Positions 602 to 52,132 of a stretch of DNA of 64,000 nucleotides are shown in pieces. The notes beneath the pieces were generated by a model that was given only the letters and a program-made list of their open reading frames with translations, searched no databases and was not told where the DNA came from. The position numbers and the translations under genes are program-made. Numbering within the stretch: position 1 is the first letter of the stretch; each line of letters starts with the position of its first letter. The DNA lies in IMG/VR virus record IMGVR_UViG_3300013116_000108, positions 62,001 through 126,000 of that record, one strand, 5' to 3'.

Positions 602-1060
602 TTACCACTTACGACAACTCCAGTACCTTGCTTTTGTCTTAGGTCCTGGATTATCACAGTTATGCCTTGCTCTAAATGATTTTCTTGCTTTAGGATTATT
701 CTTTCTAATTTTCATAGCCTTGCCCTTAACACTAGAACCGCCATGACCAAAGTTTACTTTTTTAACATTTCCTGTTTTAGGATCTTTAACATAAACTTTA
801 AATTTCTTAACGTCACCTTGCATTGGCTTGTTAAGTTTTACTTTACGACCTTGATACTCTGCTTCAAACGTATCACTTTCATCAATACTATAACCTAAGT
901 ATCCGTAGTCTTCAAAAAATTCGTTATCACTATCGTATGAATATTCAGTTTCGCTAACTTTTACACAGTTATTAACACGTTTACCTTTGTTTTTTCCTGT
1001 GCCGGGTTTAGTTCCTTGTTTTTTGTAACCATCCCAACAATCTATTTCACTTATTCTCAT
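602..1060 (-). CDS. Basic DUF6321-like phage protein, probable head/internal protein
   Basis: C-terminal YQGRKVKLNKP...KKFKVYVKDPKTGNVKKVNFG...RKSFRARHNC...KARYWSCRKW and N-terminal CWDGYKK...NNCVK modules typical of marine T4-like phages; starts MRISEI. Confidence 0.6.
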   Translation of the reverse strand: MRISEIDCWDGYKKQGTKPGTGKNKGKRVNNCVKVSETEYSYDSDNEFFEDYGYLGYSIDESDTFEAEYQGRKVKLNKPMQGDVKKFKVYVKDPKTGNVKKVNFGHGGSSVKGKAMKIRKNNPKARKSFRARHNCDNPGPKTKARYWSCRKW

Positions 1061-1064
1061 AAAT

Positions 1065-1397
1065 TTACCTTCTTTTGTTTAATGCTCGTTTGGCCATATC
1101 ATCTACTTTTTTATCAGCATCTATTTCTGGCTCTTCAGCGTCGATTGAATCATTGTCTATTTCATCAGGGGATTTTAGTATAATACTATCCTGATTTATG
1201 TCAGCGATAAGGTTTTGTAAATTAGGATTTTCGTCGTATGCTTTTTTAATAGCAGGATAACTTAAAGGTATTCCCATTTTTTGACCCATAGCAATAAAGG
1301 CCTTCATAGGCATTTCTTTGTTGTCACCTTCTATTTTGTTGGCTAGGAAAGCCATTAATGAAGATAATTTAGTAGGAGCAAACTCAACGAGTCGCAT
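1065..1397 (-). CDS. Hypothetical protein, probable head protein
   Basis: 110-aa ORF in a late operon; N-terminus MRLVEF. Confidence 0.55.
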   Translation of the reverse strand: MRLVEFAPTKLSSLMAFLANKIEGDNKEMPMKAFIAMGQKMGIPLSYPAIKKAYDENPNLQNLIADINQDSIILKSPDEIDNDSIDAEEPEIDADKKVDDMAKRALNKRR

Positions 1398-2464
1398 TAG
1401 CGTTCCTCTCTGTCTAACCCCGGTTCACCTTCAGTTCCGCCTTCTGGAGCATCTAAGTCCATAGCAGGAATTTCAGCATCTAAATCTAAATCGCCTGCTG
1501 GTTCCATAGCATCAGCACCATCTTCAGGTTCAGCACCTAAGTCAATACCTGTTTCTTCACCAGTTAACATTCTAGCGGCACTATCCATTCCACTTCTTGC
1601 TGATTCAACAGCACTTAAACAAGTTTCAATTGTTCCTTTAGCGGCATTTGAGAATCCATCTGCTTTATCTTGGCCCATTTCATCTCTAATAGCATCTACT
1701 AATGGTGGAAGGTTTTCATTTTGTAATTCGCCTAGTTGCTCTTGCATTTTTTGAAGTTGGTCAACCATATCTTTAGCGGCTAATACTAATTCTGCTGATT
1801 CCATTTCGCCTTCTTTTAAAATGCCTTCTTTAATTTTTAACATTCTTTTACTTCTTTTATCTAACTGTTGCATTATTCTAACGTTAGATAAACTTGCTGA
1901 CATAACGTTTTCTAGTAAGTCTAGTAATGGAACTAGACCTTCCATAAAGTTTGCCGGAACGCTTTTACCTGCTTTTGCCATCTTAAGGGCATTTATGGCT
2001 TTAGCATAGTTTTGGCCGCCAACAAGCAATCTAAGAGCCTGTTTAGCAGTCGCGTTATCACCGAATGCTTCTGTTACAGATTCTTTTGCTTTGCCTTTGT
2101 ATTCGTATCTAGGATCGCCTGCTTTATAACGTTTCCATGCCGGAGTATTTGCTTTTCTATCAGCATCTGTTACTTGCATTTTACGTCCTGGAATGTCGTG
2201 TTCTTTAACTGTAGGCAATTTTTGCTCAGTAAGCCATTTCTCTAATGCTTCTACTGTTAATACAGCATTTAAGTATTTTTGAGATGTCTTAGCATCTTGC
2301 CCACTTAATTTAATTTGTGTGATATCATTTCTAGTTGATTCTAATACTTCCAATGCTACTGCTGGAGTTAACTTGGAAAAATCAATTTCATGATTAAATG
2401 TTTTTTTAAGTTGTTTGTTCACTGCTGAACTAGTAACTCTTTTTTCAATTTCCATTAAATTCAT
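1397..2464 (-). CDS. Coiled-coil protein with acidic tail, probable prohead core/internal protein
   Basis: 355 aa; starts MNLMEI; helical; acidic C-terminus; TATAAATA upstream. Confidence 0.5.
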   Translation of the reverse strand: MNLMEIEKRVTSSAVNKQLKKTFNHEIDFSKLTPAVALEVLESTRNDITQIKLSGQDAKTSQKYLNAVLTVEALEKWLTEQKLPTVKEHDIPGRKMQVTDADRKANTPAWKRYKAGDPRYEYKGKAKESVTEAFGDNATAKQALRLLVGGQNYAKAINALKMAKAGKSVPANFMEGLVPLLDLLENVMSASLSNVRIMQQLDKRSKRMLKIKEGILKEGEMESAELVLAAKDMVDQLQKMQEQLGELQNENLPPLVDAIRDEMGQDKADGFSNAAKGTIETCLSAVESARSGMDSAARMLTGEETGIDLGAEPEDGADAMEPAGDLDLDAEIPAMDLDAPEGGTEGEPGLDREER

Positions 2465-2492
2465 AATTTTAGCCCTTTAATTTTATATAATG

Positions 2493-2500
2493 TATTTATA
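2493..2500 (-). promoter_or_regulatory. T4-type late promoter TATAAATA
   Basis: Exact T4 late consensus 29 nt upstream of the 2464 ATG. Confidence 0.6.
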
Positions 2501-2891
2501 CAATGTTCATTCGTTTTGATATTTCTTTTAATTCACGTAATGCTTTTTCCCACCCGGCCGCACTTAGATCTAGGCGTGTTTGATACAGTAAAATAGCATC
2601 ATTGTCGTGTCTTTTGTGTGCTTCTTTTAAATGATACTGGTGAAACATGGCATCATTCTTGTGTTTTCCTAAATTATCATCAATTCGTTTAATTTCTTCC
2701 GGATAACTATTGGTTTCGTATGCTACAGCATAGGATACAGCACCCAATCTAGAAGAAAATTCCATTTTTAAACCAGGTCTTTTATAACGCCACAGTCCGC
2801 CCTTAACTTGAACCACAATGGAATCGTTAATTCTAGTGAATTTCTCGTGTTTTGTTACAATAGGAAAATGTTTATTTTCTTTTTTTGCCAT
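2496..2891 (-). CDS. Hypothetical protein
   Basis: 131-aa ORF tiling with its neighbours. Confidence 0.55.
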   Translation of the reverse strand: MAKKENKHFPIVTKHEKFTRINDSIVVQVKGGLWRYKRPGLKMEFSSRLGAVSYAVAYETNSYPEEIKRIDDNLGKHKNDAMFHQYHLKEAHKRHDNDAILLYQTRLDLSAAGWEKALRELKEISKRMNIV

Positions 2892-3084
2892 ATATCACAT
2901 CTTCGTTGATTTTCTTACGCCATACTACGCTTTTACTTACCAAAAGGTTAATTGCGGCGAAGTGTTCTTGTTTCATCGACGATCGTGATATTTTATGTTC
3001 GGGTGATTCAGAAATAATACGGAGTACTTCTATCTCTGGTTTTGATAGCCACACTTTAACCATCGGTGAGAGTTTATACCACAT
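2872..3084 (-). CDS. Hypothetical protein (possible small helix-turn-helix)
   Basis: 70-aa ORF tiling with its neighbours. Confidence 0.45.
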   Translation of the reverse strand: MWYKLSPMVKVWLSKPEIEVLRIISESPEHKISRSSMKQEHFAAINLLVSKSVVWRKKINEDVIYGKKRK

Positions 3085-3088
3085 AAAA

Positions 3089-4243
3089 TTATTTTTTATT
3101 CTGTTTTAGCCAGTTTTGGGCTATTTTATTACGAGGCTCTGCTGTTAAAAACTTTCTTAAACTGCTTTCAACTTTTGTAAATGCTTCTGCTCTATTAGGA
3201 TCTTCCAAGCCGCCTGAATTGTCTATAACAATAAACCTATCTGCTCCAAATAGTTGTTGGAACTTCATTATATTTTCTTGTACTGCTCGCCACATTTGTT
3301 CTACTTTTAATATTGGCAATTTTCTAGGACGTTGTAAATTTCTTTCTTGTGCTACTGCTAATTTTGTATTAACAAATAACATCATTGTGCCATAACCTAA
3401 ATCAATCATTTCTTGTCTTATTTTTGCTGTCTTTTCAACATCACGACCAGTGCCGTCAATTACTACACCTAGTTTGCCGTCTAACCACCAGCCTTTTTGC
3501 TTCGCCATTAATTCTTTGCCTTGATCCCTAGTTGCTTGTCCGTCTGGGCTATAAATTTGTTCAGGGTCACCTACGTCCATGCCCTTTTTTGCCATTAAGT
3601 GTTCAAACATTTTATCTGAATCTATTACTTTTAATCCAAATTGTTTTAATACTTCTCGTGCTACATGAGATTTACCAGAACCAGGCCCGCCTGCCATAAA
3701 CACGGCTTTAAAAATATGTTTGTCTTGGGGGCCTTCTTCTATATTTAAACCAGTATCAACTAGTCTTTTTTTTTGAACAGTTTCAATCTGCTTATTGTAT
3801 TTGGCTCTAATTAAACTTGGCTTTAATCCAAGTTCTCTCGTCCTTATATCATCAACAGCGTTTTGGATTCTATATGCTATCTCTTTTGCTTTAGCATTGT
3901 CTGTTCCTTCAGCACTTTTAAATAACATTTCTACATACTCATCTATAGTAGCCAAGTATCCTGCTATATTGCCTTCGTTGTCTACTGAAACTTCTGATTC
4001 TATAGAAACTGTTTGTCCAGGTTTTGCTCCGCCTGGCTTTTTAAGTTTATTTTTATTATCGTGATTTAATTTAATAGATGTTTTACCACCACTTGAACTA
4101 ACATCAATGTTTGGATCTTTATCTAAATCCAAATTCATAGTTTGTCCTGGGCCTGTTTGTACAGATATCTTTTTACCATCCGGAGAAATTTTAGTAACTT
4201 TTCCTTGTTGTGGGTTTGCTTCTATTAATTTATACCAGCTCAT
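3089..4243 (-). CDS. Fusion protein with C-terminal P-loop kinase (zeta-toxin/AAA_33/PNK-like)
   Basis: KAVFMAGGPGSGKS Walker A, VIDSD, VVIDGTG, LAVAQERNLQRPR lid. Confidence 0.75.
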   Translation of the reverse strand: MSWYKLIEANPQQGKVTKISPDGKKISVQTGPGQTMNLDLDKDPNIDVSSSGGKTSIKLNHDNKNKLKKPGGAKPGQTVSIESEVSVDNEGNIAGYLATIDEYVEMLFKSAEGTDNAKAKEIAYRIQNAVDDIRTRELGLKPSLIRAKYNKQIETVQKKRLVDTGLNIEEGPQDKHIFKAVFMAGGPGSGKSHVAREVLKQFGLKVIDSDKMFEHLMAKKGMDVGDPEQIYSPDGQATRDQGKELMAKQKGWWLDGKLGVVIDGTGRDVEKTAKIRQEMIDLGYGTMMLFVNTKLAVAQERNLQRPRKLPILKVEQMWRAVQENIMKFQQLFGADRFIVIDNSGGLEDPNRAEAFTKVESSLRKFLTAEPRNKIAQNWLKQNKK

Positions 4244-4521
4244 TATCTCATTGCCTTATTCATTGATTGTACCCTGCGACTTGCTGGGTTAATACGTTTT
4301 GTTCTTCTAGATTTTAAAGCATTTCTTCTTTTATACTTTGCTTTAGTTATCATTAATTTAATACGTTTTTTAACGTTAGGTGCTTTATAACAAGCACCAG
4401 GTGTAGAGACAATTTTGCCTTTAAGCCTGCCTGTAGAACAGCGGTACTTACGGACAACTTTCTTGCCTGATCTGGCCCATGCCATTGTTGTTTCTAGTTG
4501 TGTAATTTCTTCGACTAGCAT
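4243..4521 (-). CDS. Small, very basic protein, probably virion-associated
   Basis: 92 aa, K/R-rich; starts MLVEEI; TAAATA-N5-ATG. Confidence 0.6.
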   Translation of the reverse strand: MLVEEITQLETTMAWARSGKKVVRKYRCSTGRLKGKIVSTPGACYKAPNVKKRIKLMITKAKYKRRNALKSRRTKRINPASRRVQSMNKAMR

Positions 4522-4526
4522 ACTTG

Positions 4527-4532
4527 TATTTA
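4527..4532 (-). promoter_or_regulatory. Late promoter TAAATA, 5 nt before ATG
   Basis: TAAATA-caagt-ATG (4521); no Shine-Dalgarno. Confidence 0.6.
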
Positions 4533-4542
4533 GTACGCGATA

Positions 4543-4806
4543 TTAATTAAGGATAATTAGTTGATAGGTCAAAAATGCCACTGCAGACACTAATGCTCCT
4601 ATTATACCAACTCCTATAGTCGTTACTTGTTTAGCACGACTTGTCTTATCTTTATACATAGCGTCACGTAACTCTACTAAAACTTCGTCCATTTTAGTCA
4701 TACGCTCGTCAATCGAGTCCAATTTCTCTTCCATTCTCTTATACCTTTCTGCACATAAATCAACGTGTGCCTCGAGGCTTTCTTTTTCAACGTCTAAAAC
4801 TGCCAT
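4543..4806 (-). CDS. Coiled-coil protein with one C-terminal TM helix (holin/XhlA-like architecture)
   Basis: EAHVDLCAERY heptads followed by IGVGIIGALVSAVAFLTYQLIIL. Confidence 0.5.
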   Translation of the reverse strand: MAVLDVEKESLEAHVDLCAERYKRMEEKLDSIDERMTKMDEVLVELRDAMYKDKTSRAKQVTTIGVGIIGALVSAVAFLTYQLIILN

Positions 4807-4844
4807 TGTGTCTTCTCACCTATGTATATCGTTAATTAGTGAGT

Positions 4845-4902
4845 TGCTACTATTACAATGCTATTGTGTTATGCCTATAAAGTTTGCCTATTGTGTTGCC
4901 TA
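4845..4902 (-). repeat. Five TAG(G)CA motifs with 12-14 nt period in the leader of the 4806 gene
   Basis: Plus-strand TGCTA at 4845 and 4859, TGCCTA at 4872, 4885 and 4897; CTATTGTGTT at 4861 and 4888. Confidence 0.7.
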
Positions 4903-4932
4903 CTAGTGTCAACTTGCTCTTCTAACCACAAG

Positions 4933-4938
4933 TATTTA
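4933..4938 (-). promoter_or_regulatory. Late promoter TAAATA
   Basis: Motif at the far end of the 135-nt intergenic leader. Confidence 0.5.
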
Positions 4939-4940
4939 TG

Positions 4941-5462
4941 CTAAACGTCTAAAGCATAACAGAGTGTATTTACTTTAACGCCTGTTGTAGCAAGGGTACT
5001 TGAAGTTAAATTTACTGTTTCTTGTAACCCTGTTAATACAGGTATAATATCTAACTGGTCTGTTAGTAATTTAACAGGATCATTGTCGCTACTAAAGATA
5101 TCAGGGGTTTCAAAGCCAAACTCCATAGTCCATACTTTGTGTTTTCCTTTGTAACCAAACCCTAACGAGCCTATACTAACAGTTTCACTAGTAGGCTCTT
5201 TTAACATAATAGGCTGAGCTCTAATAGAAATGCATTGTACAAGGGTTTCCCAGTTACGTTGCTCGTTCCTACTAATGTTCCATGTTTCTTGATTATTAAT
5301 AATATTTTTTAAATCGTCAACAAACGGCAAAGGTACATCTGCTCTAAATTCTGATATCATACCAGTAGCAGAAATATCTACTAATGTTTTAATTTGATAA
5401 TGGCTTCTTAGTGTTCCAAAATCATATCCTGTAGGTGAGCCGTGTGCTGTTCCTGATGTCAT
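4941..5462 (-). CDS. Hypothetical, probable structural protein
   Basis: 173-aa ORF in the late region. Confidence 0.5.
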   Translation of the reverse strand: MTSGTAHGSPTGYDFGTLRSHYQIKTLVDISATGMISEFRADVPLPFVDDLKNIINNQETWNISRNEQRNWETLVQCISIRAQPIMLKEPTSETVSIGSLGFGYKGKHKVWTMEFGFETPDIFSSDNDPVKLLTDQLDIIPVLTGLQETVNLTSSTLATTGVKVNTLCYALDV

Positions 5463-6547
5463 AATGTATACCTCTGTGAATTAAATGTTCCTTCGGCACT
5501 ACTAAACTCATAATCACTTCCGCATGTTCTTCCGCATGTAAATAACTTTGGATTACTGTCTGCCATTGTATTCTCCCAACTATCATTTAAATCTTTATTA
5601 TAAAAACTATGTTCTAATACTTGTTCTAAAGTGTACTTTTTTAATGAATTAAAATCTTTTCCGTATCTTTCTTGTATTTGTTTTATTTGCTTTTTTTGAA
5701 TATTATCCTCATCATCAAAATATGTAGGAGCACCTACCCAACAACAGGGCCATAAATTCATTTCAAAATCAATGTAAACAGTAGTATCTTTTTTATATTT
5801 ACATGTTATAGGAGTTTGATCGACGTAATTATTAAATGTTCCAAACTTATCTATAATTTGATCATACTTTGTTTTATTTTTATTTTCTTTACTGGAAATA
5901 ATGTTTTTATGTTTTGTTTCTATTTCCATTACTTTGTTAAAGTCACTTACTTTTACAAACCTACTAGTGTTTTTATAGTTAATACTTTTAAACCCCATTT
6001 CTTTTGCTAGTTCTTTTGCTTTTGCTACTTGGTGTATATTATGATCAAATATTAAATAATCCCAATTAGCGTTTCCACCTGCTTCAATAAATGCTGTAAT
6101 ATTTTCTTTTAATTTTTTCCAGTTACTATTAATACGATATAGATGGTTAGTATCTTCTAATCCATCTATACTAAAATCTACTCTATCAGTATCTCTATCT
6201 AAAATGTGTGCTATTCTAGTCCACCAAGCAGGAGATTGGGCACTACCATTTGTAACTACTGTAAGTCCTTGTACACCAGAATGTCTTATAAACTCTAAAC
6301 ATTCTAGAAAATTATTACTAGCAATACTATCACCGTAGTTGCCACACCAAAATATTCTTTTTATTTGTTTAGCAAAATCAGGTGTTAATATTCTTTTATA
6401 ATCATCAATAGTTAATTCACCCATTGGTAATATTGGGTTTTTATTACCGTTATTATCTACCCTAGCACATTGAGGACAAAGTAAATTACATTTACTAGTG
6501 TGTTCAATGTGCAATGTTGTGATTTCGCTAAGATTTAGATAATTCAT
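5459..6547 (-). CDS. Radical SAM enzyme with SPASM/twitch-like C-terminal domain
   Basis: CNLLCPQC (CxxxCxxC), WCGNYGD, VTNGS, FSIDG, WPCCW, CGRTC. Confidence 0.9.
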   Translation of the reverse strand: MNYLNLSEITTLHIEHTSKCNLLCPQCARVDNNGNKNPILPMGELTIDDYKRILTPDFAKQIKRIFWCGNYGDSIASNNFLECLEFIRHSGVQGLTVVTNGSAQSPAWWTRIAHILDRDTDRVDFSIDGLEDTNHLYRINSNWKKLKENITAFIEAGGNANWDYLIFDHNIHQVAKAKELAKEMGFKSINYKNTSRFVKVSDFNKVMEIETKHKNIISSKENKNKTKYDQIIDKFGTFNNYVDQTPITCKYKKDTTVYIDFEMNLWPCCWVGAPTYFDDEDNIQKKQIKQIQERYGKDFNSLKKYTLEQVLEHSFYNKDLNDSWENTMADSNPKLFTCGRTCGSDYEFSSAEGTFNSQRYTL

Positions 6548-6582
6548 TATATATGTACTTATCTAGTGTTGAACATGGGGTC

Positions 6583-6611
6583 AAAAAAATAGGCACTATA
6601 AAAGTGCCTAT
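6583..6611 (-). terminator. Rho-independent terminator
   Basis: Stem ataggcact/agtgcctat with T-run on the minus strand, after the 6642-6935 gene. Confidence 0.8.
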
Positions 6612-6641
6612 TTAAACTTCGGGAGGAAGTTTTAAGTTTTA

Positions 6642-6935
6642 TTAGTTAAAGTATGCAACTACTGCCGCCGTAACACCTGTTACGCCACCAAAGTTAGAAC
6701 CTGCCGCTGGAGCAACACCTTCTGATAGTACATGTACTACGTCTGAAGCGCCTGCGTTAAATCCACCTGTAGTGTCATCACCAATACCAACGATAGTCGC
6801 TGTTAATTGGATGTAAGCGATACATGAATCAAGCTCTGCTTGAGTTAAGTTTGATTTAGATAGGCTTGTAAGTGCTACCTCTTTACCAGCGAAGAATACA
6901 TCACCTGCGCCGTGAACTTTTGTTAAATCTGCCAT
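6642..6935 (-). CDS. Small Gly/Ala-rich probable structural (decoration-type) protein
   Basis: Own late promoter, strong GGAG RBS, own terminator, high-expression codon usage. Confidence 0.55.
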   Translation of the reverse strand: MADLTKVHGAGDVFFAGKEVALTSLSKSNLTQAELDSCIAYIQLTATIVGIGDDTTGGFNAGASDVVHVLSEGVAPAAGSNFGGVTGVTAAVVAYFN

Positions 6936-6989
6936 TTTAAGACTCCTTTTATTTTTGTGAACCCGTCAATAACTTTGCGGGCATACATA

Positions 6990-6995
6990 TATTTA
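6990..6995 (-). promoter_or_regulatory. Late promoter TAAATA followed by a 5' hairpin
   Basis: TAAATA, then CCCGCAA...TTGACGGG hairpin, then GGAG RBS. Confidence 0.55.
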
Positions 6996-7005
6996 GCCAA
7001 AACGG

Positions 7006-7659
7006 CTAATTTCGGATGCCTTTGATTTGATTTTTAATACGTGGATCACGTATTGCTTTATACAATGCCGCACCAGCAACAGCACCCCATACAAGTTTGT
7101 TTTTATGTAGTGGGCTTTTTGCTTGATCTATGCCTAAGTCTTTCTTTCGCATTGTTTTATGATAGCCTGGCATAAAATCACTGCCTTTAGCAGTATGATT
7201 TAAAGCAAAACCTAGTCTAGTAGCCGCTACTTTACGCTCTGATGGTAACATTCTAGGCCAGTCAGCAATAACACGCCTCATTTGATTTGTTGCTCCGCTT
7301 CTAACACCTAGTCCACGTTGTAACATAATTAAATTACGCCTGTCTGCTTGTGTATCTAATCTACCATTAGCAATACCTTGTAAATAACCTCTTACTTGAT
7401 TTTGAGGTGTTTTATCTACACTTGCTATTAAGTTATGTAAGTCTGTAGCACCAGGGCGTACACTATTAAATGGTAAACTTAACGTTTTTCTAGCATAGGC
7501 TTGAGCCGCCTTTGGATTCTCATATTTCATTACTTGTAAACCTAGTAAGTGAGAATATAAAGTATCTGCTAATTGTCCTTGACTAGTTGCCGCTATCCTT
7601 GTTGGATTTTTAAACATTCTTGCTTCTGCTAATTCTTCTTTTATAAATTCAAAAGCCAT
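7006..7659 (-). CDS. Hypothetical, probable head/internal protein
   Basis: Likely start MAFEFIKEELAEA at 7659 (TAATG overlap with the upstream stop). Confidence 0.55.
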   Translation of the reverse strand: MAFEFIKEELAEARMFKNPTRIAATSQGQLADTLYSHLLGLQVMKYENPKAAQAYARKTLSLPFNSVRPGATDLHNLIASVDKTPQNQVRGYLQGIANGRLDTQADRRNLIMLQRGLGVRSGATNQMRRVIADWPRMLPSERKVAATRLGFALNHTAKGSDFMPGYHKTMRKKDLGIDQAKSPLHKNKLVWGAVAGAALYKAIRDPRIKNQIKGIRN

Positions 7660-8921
7660 TACTTGCTCCAACTCTTTGCTTGATTAAAGTTTGCTTTGTT
7701 AAACTCTAATCTATCGTTGAGTTTAACTGCTCCACCTTCCATTCCAAATGCTACAAAACCTTCTGGATTTGTAACTTTATAACCATCATCTGTTTTTAAG
7801 AATGTACCAACACTTTGTTCAATACGTTCTAGTTTCTTTAATAGTTTTAATTTAAGTTGTATAACTTGTTTGTATACTGCCATTACTATTAATATTGTAT
7901 TTAAATTGTCTTCTACAAATTTTTCTGTTGCTAATACTTTTTCTAATCTTTTTTGTGCGGCCGGTCCTTCTGGACCTGTTTTAAGTTTTGAAATTTCGCC
8001 TTCCATTTTTTCTTTAAAATATTCTATAAATTCTTTTACAAACTGTATTGGTTCACCAACACTAGTGCCTGCTGTAATTCTTTTATTAATAAAAGGTTTT
8101 AACCAAGTAGCAAGAGCAGGATCTTCTAAAAATTTATTAAATGTTTCTGGTGTTGCTTTCTTTAATGTAATTTGTGCCTGTCCTAAACCGTTTGAAACTA
8201 CTTTATCTTCTTGGCTAGTAAGTGTTGCTTTACCGCCTACATCTTTATAATAAGCATCATCAACCCAAACACTACTTGTAGGCTTTAAATTACCAACACT
8301 AGCACCAAACGAGGCTTTCATATCTGCTAAAGTTTCGCCTGTGTATGTAGTATGGAATACTACACCTAGTTGTGCTGATTTAATTTTTCTTCCAATGTCT
8401 GAATCTACTGGAACTGAATATGTAATAGTATTAGGTGTAAATGTATGTACTTCCTCACCACTTATTGTAGTAGTTTCTAAATCTTCTGCTGTAAACATCA
8501 TATCGCCTTGTAAAACGCCTTGTATACCTAATTTACTTAACTCTGAGAGTGCTATTTTAAGTTTTTTATTAAGGCCTTCTCCTGGATACCACTTGTCTAC
8601 GTCTGCTGATGTTTTTGCCGCTTTATTTTCTGTTTTACCAAATACTGCTTTAGTGCCTACAAAGAACTTTCCGTCTACTGGATCTGTTCCGCAGAATATC
8701 GCAGGAGCACCGTCCCACTTAACTGTGACTTTACTTTGTCCTTCGCCACCCACGTTCAACATCATTCTTAAAGAATTAATATACTTCAATGCTGTAATGG
8801 CACCCTGATATCCATCATTTAAAATTAAATCTTCTAGATGCTCTAAGTGTAAATTTTTATCAGTGGCTTCTGTAATTGTTTGCCATTTACCGCGTGGTCT
8901 CATTACTTCTGTTATTAACAT
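7659..8921 (-). CDS. DUF6267-like protein with ATP-dependent ligase/nucleotidyltransferase-like motifs
   Basis: KNLHLEHLED; VTVKWDGAP (KxDG); VLQGDMMF; NPEGFV; AVKL.DRLEF. Confidence 0.65.
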   Translation of the reverse strand: MLITEVMRPRGKWQTITEATDKNLHLEHLEDLILNDGYQGAITALKYINSLRMMLNVGGEGQSKVTVKWDGAPAIFCGTDPVDGKFFVGTKAVFGKTENKAAKTSADVDKWYPGEGLNKKLKIALSELSKLGIQGVLQGDMMFTAEDLETTTISGEEVHTFTPNTITYSVPVDSDIGRKIKSAQLGVVFHTTYTGETLADMKASFGASVGNLKPTSSVWVDDAYYKDVGGKATLTSQEDKVVSNGLGQAQITLKKATPETFNKFLEDPALATWLKPFINKRITAGTSVGEPIQFVKEFIEYFKEKMEGEISKLKTGPEGPAAQKRLEKVLATEKFVEDNLNTILIVMAVYKQVIQLKLKLLKKLERIEQSVGTFLKTDDGYKVTNPEGFVAFGMEGGAVKLNDRLEFNKANFNQAKSWSK

Positions 8922-9527
8922 TTATTTTCCTAATTCTGCGGCTATTTCTTTTTTCGCAATTCTACCAGTTTTTGTGCCAACCCATTGGGCACCTTTCCAT
9001 TCGTACTCATTGCCGTCTGATGCTGTTTTCCTAGCACCTACTTGATTTTGAGCCGCTGTTGGATTTTCATCGCCTGCCGGTTTTGGCATAGGCTCACGTA
9101 TTTCTTTTCTTATTTTTTCAGGTAAATGTTTTTCAATTTGGTCTCTAAACAGTTCTGCCTCTTTTTCACTTTTAGGCTTTAATAATATTGCTGTTACAAT
9201 TCTAAATATAGCGTTAGCACCTTTAGTTCCTTGTGTGAAATTAATAGCACCGTTGTTCATTGCTTTTTTGTGATCTATATTAACTGAACTAGTTCCGTAA
9301 AATTTATCGATCCAAGCATTTAGTAATCCTTGAGGATTTACTTTAGCAAATTCTTGGTTCTTTTGAACAGCATGGCTCCAAAAAGCATAATGCTTTTCTA
9401 CCATTGATATTACTTCTCCAATTTGTCCTCCTTTACCAGAAAATCCTCCCGACAACTTTGAAGATTTTTTTTGTGCTTTTTGCCACTTATTAACGTATTT
9501 TTCTACGTCAATTTCACTAATTATCAT
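8922..9527 (-). CDS. Hypothetical, probable head/internal protein
   Basis: Starts MIISEI; short C-terminal module DGNEYEWKGAQWV. Confidence 0.5.
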   Translation of the reverse strand: MIISEIDVEKYVNKWQKAQKKSSKLSGGFSGKGGQIGEVISMVEKHYAFWSHAVQKNQEFAKVNPQGLLNAWIDKFYGTSSVNIDHKKAMNNGAINFTQGTKGANAIFRIVTAILLKPKSEKEAELFRDQIEKHLPEKIRKEIREPMPKPAGDENPTAAQNQVGARKTASDGNEYEWKGAQWVGTKTGRIAKKEIAAELGK

Positions 9528-9765
9528 TTTTTAACTTCCTAATACCTCTAGTAAACTTAATTGGTTCTTGTTTCTTGATTGCCGCTATAAATCTTTTTTC
9601 TAAATCTTGTGATACTTCTTCAGAAAAGTTTTCTTTAATCATTTTAATTAGATTAATTGATGATTGTATCAGGTGAGTTGCTCTACTTTCCACCACATGT
9701 TTTCGGTCTTTGTCGATCGCTATCGCATCTAGCTCTTCTAATAATGATCTAGTCTTATGTTTCAT
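9517..9765 (-). CDS. Hypothetical protein
   Basis: 82 aa; GGAG RBS; TAAATA at 9791-9800. Confidence 0.6.
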   Translation of the reverse strand: MKHKTRSLLEELDAIAIDKDRKHVVESRATHLIQSSINLIKMIKENFSEEVSQDLEKRFIAAIKKQEPIKFTRGIRKLKNDN

Positions 9766-9876
9766 TAAGAGTCTCCCTGTATAGTATAGTTATTTATTTA
9801 ATTTCGGATACTTGTTGAAAGATCTTAAAATTGTTTTTGCTCAATATTGGTTAAATACAAGTATTAAGGAGACCAT

Positions 9877-10605
9877 ATGAACAGAAGTAATCATTTTGCC
9901 AACCTTTCAGGATTGGTATATAGAGATTTTAATGCTGGCTTAACGGCTAAATTAAAAAAACTAGGTTATAGTAAAGTCAAATACGTTGATGTAAACGGTG
10001 CTCAAGCAATGATTTTAACTAATAATAAAGAACAAGTAATTGCTTTTAGGGGAACAGAGCCTAAGCAATTTAGTGATATTGCGGCAGACTTAAAAGCATG
10101 GAAAAGCAAGTCTAAAACAGAGGGCAAAGTACATGACGGGTTTTATGACGAAGTTAATAAAGTCTGGTCAAAAATAACACCGTTATTAAGCAAATCTAAA
10201 CCGTTGTTTATAACTGGACACAGTTTAGGTGGTGCTATGGCTACTATTGCCGCAAGTAGACTAGAAGATCAAACAGAATGCTTATATACGTTTGGATCTC
10301 CAAGAGTAGGTAATAAAAAATTTGTAGAAGGCTTAAAAGTAAAACATTATAGATGGCGTAATAACAATGATTTAGTTCCTACTGTTCCTATGGCTATTAT
10401 GGGATTTAAACATCACGGAACTTATTGCTACATTAACCATTACGGAAACATAAGAAATGGTTTGAGTAAATGGCAGAGATTTAAAGATTGGTGTAGAGGG
10501 CATTGGGCCGCTATTAAAAATCTTGAATTATTTGACGGAATAAGAGATCACGGGATACCCAACTACGTTAAGCATACGGCAAAAAATAAAGAAAGTAGTA
10601 ATTAA
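9877..10605 (+). CDS. Class 3 lipase (alpha/beta hydrolase)
   Basis: VIAFRGTE, VHDGF, ITGHSLGGA nucleophile elbow, YTFGSPRVG, NNNDLVP, terminal DH; AAGGAG RBS; TAAATA at 9852. Confidence 0.9.
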   Translation: MNRSNHFANLSGLVYRDFNAGLTAKLKKLGYSKVKYVDVNGAQAMILTNNKEQVIAFRGTEPKQFSDIAADLKAWKSKSKTEGKVHDGFYDEVNKVWSKITPLLSKSKPLFITGHSLGGAMATIAASRLEDQTECLYTFGSPRVGNKKFVEGLKVKHYRWRNNNDLVPTVPMAIMGFKHHGTYCYINHYGNIRNGLSKWQRFKDWCRGHWAAIKNLELFDGIRDHGIPNYVKHTAKNKESSN

Positions 10606-10609
10606 TTTC

Positions 10610-11359
10610 TTACAAACGGTATAGTACTTTATCAATAGTACCACTAGTTACTGTTCTAGAAAACCTAATATGTGAATAAACTCCATTCCAATTAATATAA
10701 ACATTGTCTGCTTGGTTTGTATAAGTTTTTTCTGTTATAGTAAACCACTCATCTGTGTCTAATTCGCTTATAGCGGCCATACTACCCTCAATTTTTAGTG
10801 TTCCTGTAAAGTTTGTAAAACAAACTTGGGCTGTGTGTAGTGCTTTATTTTCATTTAAATGCGGATAGGCTTGTACTGATACTGGATTAGCGTCTGGTAA
10901 CGTTATTTCTTGAGAAGCTCTAAACTCCGTATACGGTCCATCTATTACTTCAATATTACCCATAGCACCGTGTTGATCATCTACATAAACAACTCCTCGT
11001 TCCCCACTAGTGTTATCTAAAACACTATAGTTTAAAAAAGAGCCACTAACTTTTTGTAAATCACTTTCTGTTATATCAAACTGTACTTTTCCTTTACTAG
11101 CATTAGTAATTGTGCCAGTTTTACTAATAAGTGTTTGACGTTCTTCTTGATCTAGGATATTAAAGACAAATGTTTTACCAGTAATATCCACGGCTTTCTG
11201 ATCATTATTTTTCATTTCTATTACAATAGGGTTTTTAGCACCTTTGTAAACTTTTAAATTACGAGCATACATAGTCATATTCCTGTTCGGTGTTGACCCA
11301 ATAGTGCTATATACTACTGAGTGTGATTGTGTTGTTAAATATGTTGTAGTTTTTAACAT
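10610..11359 (-). CDS. Probable baseplate/virion protein with BppU-N-like domain
   Basis: PIVIEMKNNDQKAVDITGKTFVF...ITNASKGKVQFDITESDL; late promoter 11387-11392. Confidence 0.5.
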   Translation of the reverse strand: MLKTTTYLTTQSHSVVYSTIGSTPNRNMTMYARNLKVYKGAKNPIVIEMKNNDQKAVDITGKTFVFNILDQEERQTLISKTGTITNASKGKVQFDITESDLQKVSGSFLNYSVLDNTSGERGVVYVDDQHGAMGNIEVIDGPYTEFRASQEITLPDANPVSVQAYPHLNENKALHTAQVCFTNFTGTLKIEGSMAAISELDTDEWFTITEKTYTNQADNVYINWNGVYSHIRFSRTVTSGTIDKVLYRL

Positions 11360-35428: not shown

Positions 35429-35885
35429 CTTCCATACCTGCTGTTCTTAAACGTGTTATATGTCCTAGTTGCCATTGTTTTGCTTCCAGTCCTTTCATAA
35501 TACCTAAGTATCTATTTCGTAAAAGTGCTACTTCATTTATTAACGTTTCAAAGTCAATTACTTCATCTTCACCGTCAACATACTTTTCAGCATCTCTTGT
35601 TGACAATGCTCTAGCATAACTTTCTAAATAATTTTTAAAATGTTTACGTCTGATTTTTCTTAATTGTATATTAAGAAAGTTTAGCACAGCCTCAATTTCT
35701 TGAAGTTCGCTAAACCTTACTTCTGTTTGTGCTGGCAACTCTTTAAGATTTGTTTCTATGTTGCCGTGAATATTTGATTCTTGACGTGCTGTTATTAATA
35801 CACCATTGTAGTAATCTAGGAAATCGGGTAAATTTCCTAGATTATTTACTACTTTAGAATACCAGTTTTGATTATTAATATTCAT
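35415..35885 (-). CDS. uvsY: Recombination mediator UvsY
   Basis: YLESYARALSTRDAEKYVDGE...LLRNRYLGIMKGLEAKQWQL; downstream of uvsX. Confidence 0.8.
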   Translation of the reverse strand: MNINNQNWYSKVVNNLGNLPDFLDYYNGVLITARQESNIHGNIETNLKELPAQTEVRFSELQEIEAVLNFLNIQLRKIRRKHFKNYLESYARALSTRDAEKYVDGEDEVIDFETLINEVALLRNRYLGIMKGLEAKQWQLGHITRLRTAGMEDVSL

Positions 35886-36124
35886 TAATCCTCATACATC
35901 TCGTCGTCATCTTCTTCTTCGTAATTCTCTTCTTCGAGAATTTCAGCAATTGGTGTTTCTAACACATCATCTGCTTCTGCTAGGGCGTCTAACAATTCTC
36001 TGTCGGCCCCGTTGTCTTGTAATATACCTATCCAATGCTCTCCTGCTTTTTCCCTATCTTTTTCGGGTATATATTCTTTAAGCACCGACCAGGTTTCAAC
36101 GATAATATCAGTATCTATTGACAT
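35885..36124 (-). CDS. Small acidic hypothetical protein
   Basis: 79 aa between uvsX and uvsY. Confidence 0.55.
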   Translation of the reverse strand: MSIDTDIIVETWSVLKEYIPEKDREKAGEHWIGILQDNGADRELLDALAEADDVLETPIAEILEEENYEEEDDDEMYED

Positions 36125-51580: not shown

Positions 51581-52132
51581 TTATTTTCTCCCTGCCACTG
51601 GTGATGTTGTACCTTGTGGCAAATCACTAGTTGTTTTTGCTTTTTCTGTTTTACCTCCAGCAATTTCTACCTCAGGTGTTTCTTTTTGTAATTCTTTAAG
51701 AAAGCCTAATTTCGCTTCTGCTGGTGCTTCGCCCGAAGCATAATCTGAACCAAGATTTGGAATATAATCTTCGCCTTGAGTTTTTACAAACTCTTCTCTA
51801 GCAACTTCTTCTGGATGATCACTGTTAATAACAACTACGTGGTTACCAGGAAGACCTGCTAAATTTACTAAATCACTATGTACAACTTGCGGTGTACTAG
51901 GATATGTCAATGTAATTTCAAAAATAGAAACTTCGCTATTGCGAAGATTTTGAAAATCCATTGGATGTTCTTGAATTGGTGTTGTTTTAGGAGATGTAAT
52001 ATCCTTAACATCATACTTGCCTAATACTCTTTCAATAACGTCCATTAATTCTGGCTCGGCTTTCATGGCCAATTTAACCTTGAATTTATATTCTTTTACT
52101 GACTCTGCCAAGTATTCATTAAATAATTTCAT
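51581..52132 (-). CDS. Hypothetical protein, probably virion-associated
   Basis: GGAG RBS before MKLFNEYLAES at 52132; TAAATA at 52156-52161. Confidence 0.6.
   Translation of the reverse strand: MKLFNEYLAESVKEYKFKVKLAMKAEPELMDVIERVLGKYDVKDITSPKTTPIQEHPMDFQNLRNSEVSIFEITLTYPSTPQVVHSDLVNLAGLPGNHVVVINSDHPEEVAREEFVKTQGEDYIPNLGSDYASGEAPAEAKLGFLKELQKETPEVEIAGGKTEKAKTTSDLPQGTTSPVAGRK

What the first reader, a model, noticed from the sequence alone, without database searches (positions are those of the whole stretch)
602..9527. Block of late proteins sharing an N-terminal M-x-[IL]-x-E-[IFV] tag: probable capsid-targeted, injected payload
Seen in sequence: N-termini MRISEI (602), MRLVEF (1065), MNLMEI (1397), MLVEEI (4243, looser match), MLITEV (7659) and MIISEI (8922), plus MSWYKLIEA, MAFEFIKEELAE and MKLFNEYLAES (52132). 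Internal [IVL]xE motifs lie between modules. Established: T4 internal proteins carry an N-terminal capsid-targeting sequence ending in Glu (MKTYQEFIAE), and prohead protease gp21 cleaves after [IL]xE. Inference: these otherwise unrelated proteins are packaged in the head, processed and injected, forming a delivered toolkit.
Basis: partly seen in the sequence, partly recalled or inferred. Interest (0 to 1): 0.7.

Follow-up and report, generated by a model that had tools for sequence, protein, structure and literature searches.

The report
Short head-targeting tag on phage proteins
An uncultured marine T4-like jumbo phage puts the same five-to-six-residue N-terminal tag (M-x-[I/L]-x-E-[I/V/F]) on a block of unrelated late proteins. 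The tag looks like the short propeptide that phage T4 cuts off its packaged enzyme Alt, so these proteins are probably loaded into the capsid; nothing here shows that they are injected.

Summary
Six of 222 predicted proteins in the 204-kb genome start M-x-[IL]-x-E-[IFV], against 0.4-0.7 expected, and five lie in one 14-gene block (window 602-9765).

- **Conservation:** positions 3, 5 and 6 hold in orthologues while positions 2 and 4 and the codons vary. This is true in 114/117 DUF6267 homologues and 113/120 homologues of the 355-aa protein. In seven related loci, 24/90 block genes carry the tag against 0/114 flanking genes.
- **Protease:** the genome encodes a T4 gp21-type prohead protease with its catalytic triad. 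A scaffold-like protein carries 16 [IL]xE sites (3.9 expected). There is also an IPIII-like 10-mer, MKLFNEYLAE|S.
- **T4 precedent:** T4's own Alt, gp67, gp68 and gp24 start the same way (MELITE|L and so on).
- **Late expression:** tagged genes sit in tight operons behind NATAAATA late-promoter motifs.
- **Virion evidence by homology:** in cultured phage PA5oct, a syntenic block is mostly virion proteins by mass spectrometry. 9/17 tag-like proteins are in virions against a 20% background.

Capsid targeting and processing are therefore well supported but indirect. Injection is untested, and the claim about internal motifs is at chance level. This is a new member of a known kind.

The parts
9517..9765 (-). 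82-aa first gene of late operon 1. N-terminus MKHKTRSLLE|EL, with S[LI]LEEL conserved in relatives. It is a homologue of PA5oct gp259, annotated 'virion structural protein'.
   Evidence: phrog_11854; E 8e-19
9791..9798 (-). Late-promoter-like AATAAATA, 25 nt upstream of the 82-aa gene. It heads the operon 82 aa -> 201 aa -> DUF6267 -> 217 aa, whose genes abut or overlap by 0-11 nt.
8922..9527 (-). 201-aa basic protein (pI 9.6) with tag MIISE|I. Orthologues start MIISEI, MKINEI, MKIDEV, MRIDEI, MKINEV and MKIKDI.
7659..8921 (-). 420-aa DUF6267 protein. It has the tag MLITE|V plus a second site TITE|A just before the conserved core KN.HLEHLED. Residues 1-24 are disordered in the model. K68-x-D70-G71 is invariant, and there is a weak ligase-like fold signal.
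   Evidence: (PF19782, E 1e-106)
7006..7659 (-). 217-aa basic protein (pI 10.6) starting MAFEFIKE|ELAE|A. Its only two [IL]xE sites are both within the first 12 residues. The N-terminus is conserved in relatives (MAFEF[IL][KR]xEL[AGS]EA).
4243..4521 (-). 92-aa very basic protein (pI 11.7, net +25), internal-protein-like, starting MLVEEI. Orthologues start MLVNEI, MLITDL and MLILEL.
4526..4533 (-). CTAAATAC late-promoter variant only 4 nt upstream of the ATG of the 92-aa gene. It is conserved at this position in relatives.
3089..4243 (-). 384-aa basic protein (pI 9.4) with an 8-residue CTS-like start MSWYKLIE|A. Relatives start MSWFELLE|A, MSWLKLLE|T and MSWHSLLNE|L. The C-terminal half is a P-loop kinase (Zeta_toxin/AAA_33).
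1397..2464 (-). 355-aa protein with tag MNLME|I. 113/120 homologues keep the tag. Its C-terminal part is homologous to PA5oct gp247, a virion protein by MS (E 1e-14), and to 121Q-type structural proteins.
2493..2500 (-). TATAAATA (T4 late-promoter consensus) 28 nt upstream of the 355-aa gene. It heads the operon 355 aa -> 110 aa -> 152 aa.
1065..1397 (-). 110-aa protein with tag MRLVE|F. Orthologues start MRLDEF, MLLSEF, MRLTEF, MRITEV, MRASDF and MKASDF.
602..1060 (-). 152-aa basic protein (pI 9.7) with tag MRISE|I. The orthologue starts MLIKEI. It matches phrog_7595.
4941..5462 (-). Untagged 173-aa block member, homologous to PA5oct gp250 (a virion protein by MS).
   Evidence: (E 1e-8)
51581..52132 (-). 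183-aa protein outside the flagged range with a T4 IPII/IPIII-like 10-mer: MKLFNEYLAE|S against T4 MKTYQEFIAE|A. NATAAATA lies 23 nt upstream. It is a homologue of PA5oct gp282 (a virion protein by MS).
   Evidence: E 6e-20

Best explanation
The shared N-terminus M-x-[I/L/V]-x-E-[I/V/F] is a short prohead-addressing and processing propeptide of the T4 type. The proteins are made late, from three tightly coupled operons behind NATAAATA promoters. They join the scaffolding core of the assembling prohead through their N-termini. The phage's gp21-family serine protease then trims them after the Glu of [I/L]-x-E. That cut falls after residue 5 in most, after residues 8-12 in the kinase, the 217-aa, 82-aa and 183-aa proteins, and at a second site near residue 18 in DUF6267. 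The mature, mostly basic proteins stay inside the DNA-filled head.

**Shown here:**
- the motif, its enrichment and its clustering;
- its conservation at the protein level;
- the protease gene with its catalytic triad;
- the scaffold's [IL]xE excess;
- the late-promoter motifs;
- virion presence of orthologues and neighbours in PA5oct.

**Inferred:** binding to the core, cleavage, retention in the head, and, weakest of all, ejection into the host with the DNA as for T4 Alt and the IPs.
For: 1. **Enrichment and clustering:** 6 observed against 0.4-0.7 expected, 5 of them in a 14-gene block.
2. **Conservation in families:** E5 is invariant and position 3 is L/I in 114/117 DUF6267 homologues. 116/117 also have a second [IL]xE 6-7 residues before the conserved His, followed by A, S or G. 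113/120 homologues of the 355-aa protein keep the tag down to 26-40% identity.
3. **Protein-level selection:** codons at positions 3, 5 and 6 vary synonymously or conservatively.
4. **Specificity to the block:** in seven related loci the tag is on 24/90 block genes (38/90 with the looser pattern) against 0/114 (1/114) flanking replication and metabolic genes.
5. **Protease:** a Peptidase_S77 gene is present and is 33% identical to T4 gp21 with His/Ser/Asp aligned.
6. **Specificity signature:** the scaffold-like 360-aa protein has 16 [IL]xE sites against 3.9 expected, the top of the genome. The PA5oct counterpart gp330 has 19 against 4.5 and is absent from the virion MS list.
7. **Head-module N-termini:** MCP MSDTLIE|S, protease MKPLLQE|N, acidic core protein MNDKWKSLIE|L, and the 77-aa MKLFE|L in the gp67/68 position.
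8. **T4 precedents read from the T4 record:** Alt MELITE|L, gp67 MEGLIE|A, gp68 MLLIPE|T, gp24 MAKINE|L, IPII/III MKTYQEFIAE|A, IPI ...STITE|A. Alt cleavage at ITE-6 and the CTS concept are in PMC5694885 and PMC9026906.
9. **Dispensable extension:** S-PM2's DUF6267 starts directly at the core (MATQNKHLEHLED) and lacks the extension. AF2 gives pLDDT <50 for residues 1-24. So the extension is an add-on that the fold does not need.
10. **Late expression:** NATAAATA is the most enriched upstream 7/8-mer and precedes the tagged operons as well as the portal and fibre genes. A gp55-like late sigma is present.
11. **PA5oct:** it has an S77 protease. A syntenic block follows its DnaB gene, with homologues of the 82-, 173-, 249- and 355-aa proteins. 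gp254 (MRLDEI), gp279 (MKLFEV), gp104, gp105, gp333, gp247 and gp246 are flagged ESI-MS/MS. 9/17 tag-like proteins are in virions against 93/461 overall (P 0.002).
12. **S-SM1:** its only annotated protein with the tag (gp191, MNLNEL) is a virion protein with 10 peptides.
13. **Charge:** five tagged proteins have pI 9.4-11.7 against a genome median of 5.4, like T4 internal proteins.
Against: - There are no direct data for this uncultured phage: no proteome, no N-terminal sequences, no expression data.
- A 5-residue propeptide has not been shown to be sufficient for targeting in any system. The role of Alt's 6 residues is still an open question in PMC5694885, and the demonstrated T4 CTS is a 10-mer.
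- About a quarter of the 355-aa family, and some orthologues, carry Asp instead of Glu at position 5. In T4, Asp at the cleavage position blocks processing though not targeting (PMC9026906). Cleavage at position 5 may therefore not be the conserved function.
- With the strict motif alone the PA5oct enrichment is weak (4/9, P 0.09). Tagged gp256, gp103, gp408, gp375 and gp077 were not detected in virions.
- No DUF6267 homologue has been seen in a virion proteome. It is absent from Table S8 of PMC3037559 for S-SM1, S-PM2 and Syn9, although the S-SM1 and S-PM2 copies examined lack the tag (Syn9's was not examined).
- Nothing bears on ejection.
Confidence: 0.6

Rival explanations
1. The tag does mark prohead-associated proteins processed by the protease, but they are assembly or structural components (core or scaffold accessories, or vertex, neck or decoration proteins). 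They are not a payload delivered into the host, and there is no 'injected toolkit'.
For: The same kind of N-terminus sits on T4 core and shell proteins gp67, gp68, gp24 and gp22, and on this phage's MCP, protease and acidic core protein. PA5oct homologues are simply 'structural proteins' by MS. Nothing in the data addresses ejection.
Against: Unlike the scaffold (16 sites against 3.9), the block proteins have no excess of internal cleavage sites, so they would survive maturation intact. Several are strongly basic, like DNA-associated internal proteins. At least one carries an enzyme domain (P-loop kinase) and one a conserved KxDG motif, which is unusual for shell parts. They are encoded away from the head and tail modules, next to replication genes, as are the variable T4 IP and alt genes.
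Confidence: 0.25
2. The motif is not a protein signal. It reflects selection on the 5' coding region of late mRNAs (A/U-rich, unstructured start, leaderless or coupled translation), or a generic N-terminal stability rule.
For: K, L, F, E, I and N have A/U-rich codons. The genes are translationally coupled, and some late promoters lie 1-5 nt from the ATG.
Against: Amino-acid classes at positions 3, 5 and 6 are kept through many different codons (ATA/ATT/ATC/CTG/TTA/CTC; GAA/GAG; GTA/ATT/TTT and more) while positions 2 and 4 drift. E5 is invariant in 114 DUF6267 homologues. Other late or abundant genes (sheath, tube, fibres, portal) lack it. 0/114 flanking genes in relatives have it. It also matches the specificity of the encoded protease.
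Confidence: 0.06
3. It is a chance resemblance or an artefact of start-codon choice.
For: The motif is short (three constrained positions), and my gene caller is home-made.
Against: Poisson P is 3e-6 to 7e-5 and clustering P is 2.7e-6. The starts agree with independent gene calls in seven metagenome contigs and with database proteins.
Confidence: 0.01

Closest known systems
Phage T4 Alt (packaged, ejected ADP-ribosyltransferase) and its 6-residue N-terminal propeptide MELITE|L
   Same: Both have a very short N-terminal peptide ending in I-x-E on an enzyme-sized protein encoded outside the head module. Here MLITE|V and MIISE|I are almost the same string. The T4 peptide is cut by a gp21-type protease (PMC5694885).
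   Different: Here the Glu is at position 5, not 6. The same tag sits on at least six unrelated proteins rather than one. There is no ADP-ribosyltransferase. No C-terminal processing was examined. Cleavage and ejection are unproven.
T4 internal proteins IPI, IPII and IPIII with the capsid targeting sequence (CTS) MKTYQEFIAE|
   Same: Both are portable N-terminal addresses on sequence-unrelated, often basic proteins. The window's 183-aa protein has a near-copy 10-mer, MKLFNEYLAE|S. DUF6267's second site ...TITE|AT resembles IPI ...STITE|AT.
   Different: Most proteins of the block carry only the 5-6-residue form. Targeting by such a short form has never been demonstrated. The cargo proteins share no homology with the T4 IPs.
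T4 prohead core proteins gp67 and gp68 and vertex protein gp24 (MEGLIE|A, MLLIPE|T, MAKINE|L)
   Same: They share the N-terminal architecture. This genome has a 77-aa MKLFE|L protein in the gp67/68 position between portal and protease, and PA5oct's counterpart gp333 (MKINDI) is in virions.
   Different: The block proteins are not in the head module and are not enriched in internal cleavage sites.
Virion-protein block of Pseudomonas jumbo phage PA5oct (gp262-gp246, downstream of the primase and DnaB genes)
   Same: The block is syntenic. It holds homologues of the 82-, 173-, 249- and 355-aa proteins, uses the same S77 protease family, and has the same MCP N-terminus (MSNRLFE|S...ALTE|G). Members carry tag-like starts (MRLDEI, MNIAEI, MFLKDV, MKIKDI).
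   Different: PA5oct lacks DUF6267. The published analysis (PMC7318152) does not mention processing or a shared tag.
Ejection / inner-body proteins of phiKZ-like phages (phiKZ, 201phi2-1, SPN3US)
   Same: Many head-internal proteins are processed by a gp21-related protease after Glu (PMC5694885).
   Different: Those sites are S/A/G-x-E rather than I/L-x-E, with long propeptides. The phage lineage and the cargo (a virion RNA polymerase) are different.

Membership tests
T4-type CTS-bearing, gp21-processed head-internal proteins (IPs, Alt) | The phage encodes a gp21-family (Peptidase S77) prohead protease with a His/Ser/Asp triad. | tested here: met
   PF03420 at 88.8 bits (cut-off 27) at genome 146246-146677. 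It is 33% identical to T4 gp21, with H85/S140/D165 equivalents aligned.
T4-type CTS-bearing, gp21-processed head-internal proteins (IPs, Alt) | A short N-terminal propeptide ending in [I/L]-x-E. | tested here: met
   I/L-x-E ends at residue 5 in five block proteins. It ends at residue 4 in the 92-aa protein (LVE; orthologues have V/I-x-E/D ending at 5), at 8 in the kinase, at 8 and 12 in the 217-aa protein, at 10 in the 82-aa and 183-aa proteins, and at 18 as a second site in DUF6267.
T4-type CTS-bearing, gp21-processed head-internal proteins (IPs, Alt) | The tag is shared by proteins that are otherwise unrelated (a portable address). | tested here: met
   All-against-all BLASTP gives a best E of 0.037. 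The tag is absent from S-PM2 and S-SM1 DUF6267, which start at the core.
T4-type CTS-bearing, gp21-processed head-internal proteins (IPs, Alt) | Late expression together with head genes. | tested here: inconclusive
   NATAAATA motifs head the operons, and a gp55-like sigma is present. There are no expression data.
T4-type CTS-bearing, gp21-processed head-internal proteins (IPs, Alt) | Presence of the mature protein in the virion. | tested here: inconclusive
   Tested only through relatives. PA5oct homologues of four block proteins, and several tag-bearing PA5oct proteins, are flagged ESI-MS/MS (9/17 against a 20% background). Others are not detected. S-SM1 gp191 (MNLNEL) was detected.
T4-type CTS-bearing, gp21-processed head-internal proteins (IPs, Alt) | Cleavage after the Glu by the prohead protease. 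| not testable with these tools
   This needs N-terminomics or in-vitro cleavage. Asp at position 5 in roughly a quarter of one family argues that cleavage at that site is not universal.
T4-type CTS-bearing, gp21-processed head-internal proteins (IPs, Alt) | The tag is necessary and sufficient for incorporation into proheads. | not testable with these tools
   This needs reporter fusions or tag mutants.
T4-type CTS-bearing, gp21-processed head-internal proteins (IPs, Alt) | Ejection into the host with the DNA. | not testable with these tools
   No data.
Pfam DUF6267 (PF19782), for the 420-aa protein | A full-length match above the gathering score. | tested here: met
   357.7 bits against a cut-off of 27, profile positions 1-376 of 376.
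Covalent nucleotidyltransferases (ATP-dependent DNA/RNA ligases), considered for DUF6267 | The motif I lysine (KxDG) and the adenylation-domain fold. | tested here: inconclusive
   K68-W-D70-G71 is invariant in 54 sequences. Fold matches are only weak: 5cot_A Z 6.9 over 183 aa, 6n0t_A Z 6.0, and Foldseek E >= 0.09. Sequence and profile searches of the PDB found no ligase.
Zeta-toxin / AAA_33 P-loop kinases, for the 384-aa protein | A Pfam match above cut-off with a Walker A motif. | tested here: met
   Zeta_toxin at 49.8 bits (cut-off 22.3) and AAA_33 at 48.5 bits (cut-off 27), residues 179-344. GGPGSGKS is present. The substrate is unknown.

The most novel reading that the evidence does not exclude
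The M-x-[IL]-x-E-[IVF] start is a general, sequence-readable 'load into the head' address used across a large clade: marine jumbo T4-like phages and PA5oct/Rak2-like phages. Its cargo would include pre-made enzymes that are ejected with the DNA to act before any phage gene is expressed. Candidates are a ligase-like DUF6267 nucleotidyltransferase, a Zeta/PNK-like kinase, an HExxH protein and very basic DNA-binding proteins. One possible role is a pre-packaged nucleic-acid repair or counter-defence kit. Gain or loss of the tag (present in this clade, absent in S-PM2 and S-SM1 DUF6267) would switch a protein between made-in-cell and delivered-in-virion modes.
Probability: 0.15. Interest if true: 0.75.

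Novelty: new member of a known kind. Interest (0 to 1): 0.5.

Why it matters
If the tag works as in T4, the contents of the capsid, and the possible ejected proteins, of uncultured marine jumbo phages and of PA5oct-like phages can be read from sequence alone. These proteins are normally invisible to annotation; most are 'hypothetical'. It would also extend the T4 capsid-targeting principle, so far demonstrated for a 10-mer in coliphages, to a 5-6-residue form that is widespread in the ocean. It gives DUF6267, a 'signature' gene of marine T4-like phages with no known function, a testable cellular location. Finally, it offers a very short natural tag for loading foreign proteins into phage heads.

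Tried and rejected
- **DNA search of phage records:** megablast of the block found nothing.
- **An attractive shortcut that failed:** T4-GC190 'cytidyltransferase', detected in S-SM1 virions with 25 peptides, is not the DUF6267 homologue. DUF6267 is T4-GC71, which is not in the MS table. GC190 is a neighbouring cytidylyltransferase with its own IP-like start, MKKFSAFLNE|A.
- **Internal [IL]xE sites as module boundaries:** counts are at expectation in all block proteins.
- **Function of DUF6267:** there was no PDB sequence or profile hit. Foldseek and VIA-align gave only weak, recurring ligase matches, so 'ligase-like' stays a lead.
- **PA5oct gp256 (MNIAEI, contains KIDG):** it is not related to DUF6267 by Pfam or hhalign.
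- **Peptide-level PA5oct data:** the supplementary tables are not held, so N-terminal processing could not be read from published MS.
- **Literature:** no paper in the library mentions DUF6267, and the searches and reviews read turned up no CTS described in marine T4-like phages.
- **Input error:** one family-search call failed on a bad coordinate.
- **Steps not run:** Read mapping was not used, because metagenome runs cannot show timing or packaging.
- **Caveat on the PA5oct count:** my gene caller found 370 of the 461 annotated PA5oct genes, so small tagged ORFs may be missing from that count.

Full report
**What the window is.** The window is bases 62,001-126,000 of a single 204,100-bp virus contig, about 34% G+C, which the genome search reports as about 56% complete by CheckV's estimate. 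The genome encodes:
- a T4 gp21-type prohead protease (Peptidase_S77, 88.8 bits);
- a portal and a major capsid protein of the T4 class;
- a gp55-like late sigma factor.

Its nearest cultured relatives for several virion proteins are the PA5oct/Rak2-like jumbo phages. DUF6267 and gene order link it to marine Kyanoviridae-like phages: cyanophages, HTVC008M and Melnitz. Related metagenome contigs reach 283-360 kb.

**The observation.** The coordinates it gave are the low ends of the ORFs. With my own gene call (222 genes, 95% coding), ^M.[IL].E[IFV] occurs six times. The expectation is 0.38 from the any-position rate and 0.67 from position-specific N-terminal frequencies. It occurs in 1 of 1211 internal-Met contexts. 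Five of the six fall in the 14 genes between 602 and 9765 (hypergeometric P 2.7e-6).

The sixth is a 220-aa MRLFEI protein next to the primase, outside the window. A seventh, MKLFEL (77 aa), sits between portal and protease, where T4 has gp67 and gp68. The tagged proteins are not paralogues.

**The motif is selected at the protein level.**
- *DUF6267.* In 117 database homologues of DUF6267 (420 aa), 114 start M-[KLR]-[LI]-x-E-[IV], and E5 is invariant. 116 have a second [IL]-x-E 6-7 residues before the conserved His of HLEHLED, followed by Ala, Ser or Gly.
- *The 355-aa protein.* In 120 homologues, down to 26% identity, 113 keep [LI] at position 3, [ED] at 5 and [FIL] at 6, while positions 2 and 4 are free.
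- *Related contigs.* Each tagged gene keeps the tag in seven related contigs while its codons change (ATA/ATT/ATC/CTG/TTA/CTC; GAA/GAG; GTA/ATT/TTT). In those loci, 24/90 block genes (38/90 with a looser pattern) carry it, against 0/114 (1/114) flanking genes. The flanks include helicases, ribonucleotide reductase, ferredoxin and lipase genes.

**The link to the prohead protease.**
- The protease is 33% identical to T4 gp21, with the catalytic His, Ser and Asp aligned.
- The coiled-coil 360-aa protein next to it has 16 [IL]xE sites against 3.9 expected, the strongest excess in the genome, as expected of a scaffold that is chopped up. Its PA5oct counterpart gp330 has 19 against 4.5 and is the one head-module protein not flagged by MS.
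- Head-module proteins start MSDTLIE|S (MCP), MKPLLQE|N (protease), MNDKWKSLIE|L (294-aa acidic protein) and MKLFE|L.

Reading the T4 record itself gives Alt MELITE|L, gp67 MEGLIE|A, gp68 MLLIPE|T, gp24 MAKINE|L, gp22 MLKEQLIAE|A, IPII/IPIII MKTYQEFIAE|A and IPI ...STITE|AT. PMC5694885 states that six residues are removed from Alt at ITE-6. PMC9026906 summarises the CTS experiments. The block's tag is therefore the Alt/gp67/gp68 form of a T4 propeptide. The window's 183-aa protein (MKLFNEYLAE|S) carries the IPIII form.

**The extension is an add-on.** S-PM2's DUF6267 begins MATQNKHLEHLED, right where the predicted mature protein of this phage would begin. S-SM1's copy also lacks the tag. HTVC008M and Melnitz keep only a short leader ending in LVE| or ITE| before the core. 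The AlphaFold model (pLDDT 75.5) has residues 1-24 below 50.

**Late expression.** ATAAATA is the most enriched upstream 7-mer: 23 of its 39 genomic copies lie in upstream intergenic regions. NATAAATA precedes about 29 genes, including the portal, fibres, the 82-aa operon, the MNLMEI operon, and the MKLFNEYLAE, MKLFEL and MRLFEI genes. The MLVEEI gene has CTAAATAC. The same late-promoter consensus is described for S-PM2 and T4 (PMC2984593). Genes within each operon abut or overlap.

**Evidence from proteomes of relatives.** PA5oct has 93 of 461 proteins in virions by ESI-MS/MS (PMC7318152). It has an S77 protease and, directly after its primase and DnaB genes, a block that is mostly MS-positive. 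That block holds homologues of the window's proteins:

| Window protein | PA5oct homologue | E-value |
|---|---|---|
| 82 aa | gp259 | 8e-19 |
| 173 aa | gp250 | 1e-8 |
| 249 aa | gp262 | 8e-12 |
| 355 aa | gp247 | 1e-14 |
| 183 aa | gp282 (beside the terminase) | 6e-20 |

Of the annotated PA5oct N-termini with the strict motif, 4/9 are MS-positive (gp279, gp254, gp105, gp104; P 0.09). With Asp, Phe and Val allowed, 9/17 are MS-positive (P 0.002). The negatives are mostly proteins of 99 residues or fewer; the exceptions are the 446-aa gp256 and the 117-aa gp146.

In S-SM1, the only annotated protein with the tag (gp191, MNLNEL) is a virion protein. Its neighbours in the same cluster carry IP-like starts and are MS-positive. 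DUF6267 itself has never been reported in a virion proteome. The S-SM1 and S-PM2 copies examined lack the tag.

**What the cargo looks like.** Five tagged proteins are strongly basic (pI 9.4-11.7, against a genome median of 5.4). The 92-aa protein has net charge +25, reminiscent of T4 internal proteins. The 384-aa protein carries a Zeta-toxin/AAA_33 P-loop kinase domain. DUF6267 has an invariant KxDG and weak structural resemblance to RNA/DNA ligase adenylation domains; this is a lead only. The out-of-window MRLFEI protein has an HELLH motif.

**Verdict.** The shared N-terminus is real, non-random, conserved and best read as a T4-type prohead address and propeptide. I put about 0.6 on 'packaged into the head via or with this tag and, where Glu is present, trimmed by the protease'. 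I put clearly less, about 0.3-0.4, on 'ejected into the host'.

The frequent Glu-to-Asp swap at position 5 suggests that the conserved role may be binding to the core rather than cleavage at that exact bond. In T4, Asp at the cleavage position blocks cutting but not targeting. The mechanism is known from T4. What is new is its short consensus, its spread through an uncultured marine jumbo-phage clade and PA5oct-like phages, and the identity of the cargo.

Noticed in passing
window 5459-6547 (-), with 6642-6935 (-) and 4941-5462 (-): A radical SAM enzyme (CxxxCxxC near the N-terminus, Cys-rich C-terminal part) sits inside the virion-protein block. It lies between a small 97-aa protein, which relatives have as two paralogues of 97 and 116 aa, and the 173-aa homologue of PA5oct virion protein gp250. 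This could be a maturase that modifies a virion protein. A terminator-like hairpin lies in the 6548-6641 spacer.
   Followed up: partly
window 4526-4533 (92-aa gene) and upstream of 46311-48539; also genome 49353-50015 and 147775-148008: Several genes have the NATAAATA or CTAAATAC late-promoter motif only 1-5 nt before the ATG and no Shine-Dalgarno sequence. For the 92-aa gene this is conserved in relatives. The late mRNAs may be leaderless.
   Followed up: partly
window 35885-36124 (-): A 79-aa very acidic protein has 7 [IL]xE sites against 0.8 expected, the second strongest excess in the genome. It is far from the head module, and its role is unknown.
   Followed up: no
window 50201-51580 (-): A 459-aa acidic protein has a long internal tandem duplication (about 75 residues, PDEIDG.TYNGKL.YKR.GEYTYIVKDENGKE...QAKMGAP, occurring twice). 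It lies immediately downstream of the IPIII-like-tagged 183-aa gene. PA5oct's gene at the same position (gp281) is a virion protein.
   Followed up: partly
window 9877-10605 (+): A class-3 lipase/esterase gene is transcribed divergently from the block. It keeps this position next to the 82-aa gene in relatives L003, L005, L017, L018 and L020.
   Followed up: partly
genome 49353-50015 (-), i.e. 12 kb left of the window: The sixth strict tag-bearer (MRLFEI, 220 aa) lies next to the primase and contains an HELLH (HExxH) motif. It has no Pfam or PHROG match. It may be a packaged metalloprotease-like protein.
   Followed up: partly
L002 (S-PM2) 8992-10771; L013 (S-SM1) 7295-8269: S-PM2's DUF6267 homologue is split across two annotated genes (p141 and the start of p142 'cytidyltransferase') by a frame change. 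The S-SM1 and S-PM2 copies lack the N-terminal tag that almost all non-cyanophage homologues carry.
   Followed up: partly
genome 176399-189427 (+), outside the window: A single 4342-aa ORF follows an 1175-aa ORF. It is presumably a giant structural or fibre protein, as in cyanophage T4-GC969.
   Followed up: no
L025/L043 (PA5oct) 84724-85830: PA5oct gp330, annotated 'hypothetical protein', has 19 [IL]xE sites against 4.5 expected. It is the only head-module product not seen by MS. It is very probably the scaffold that the protease degrades.
   Followed up: yes
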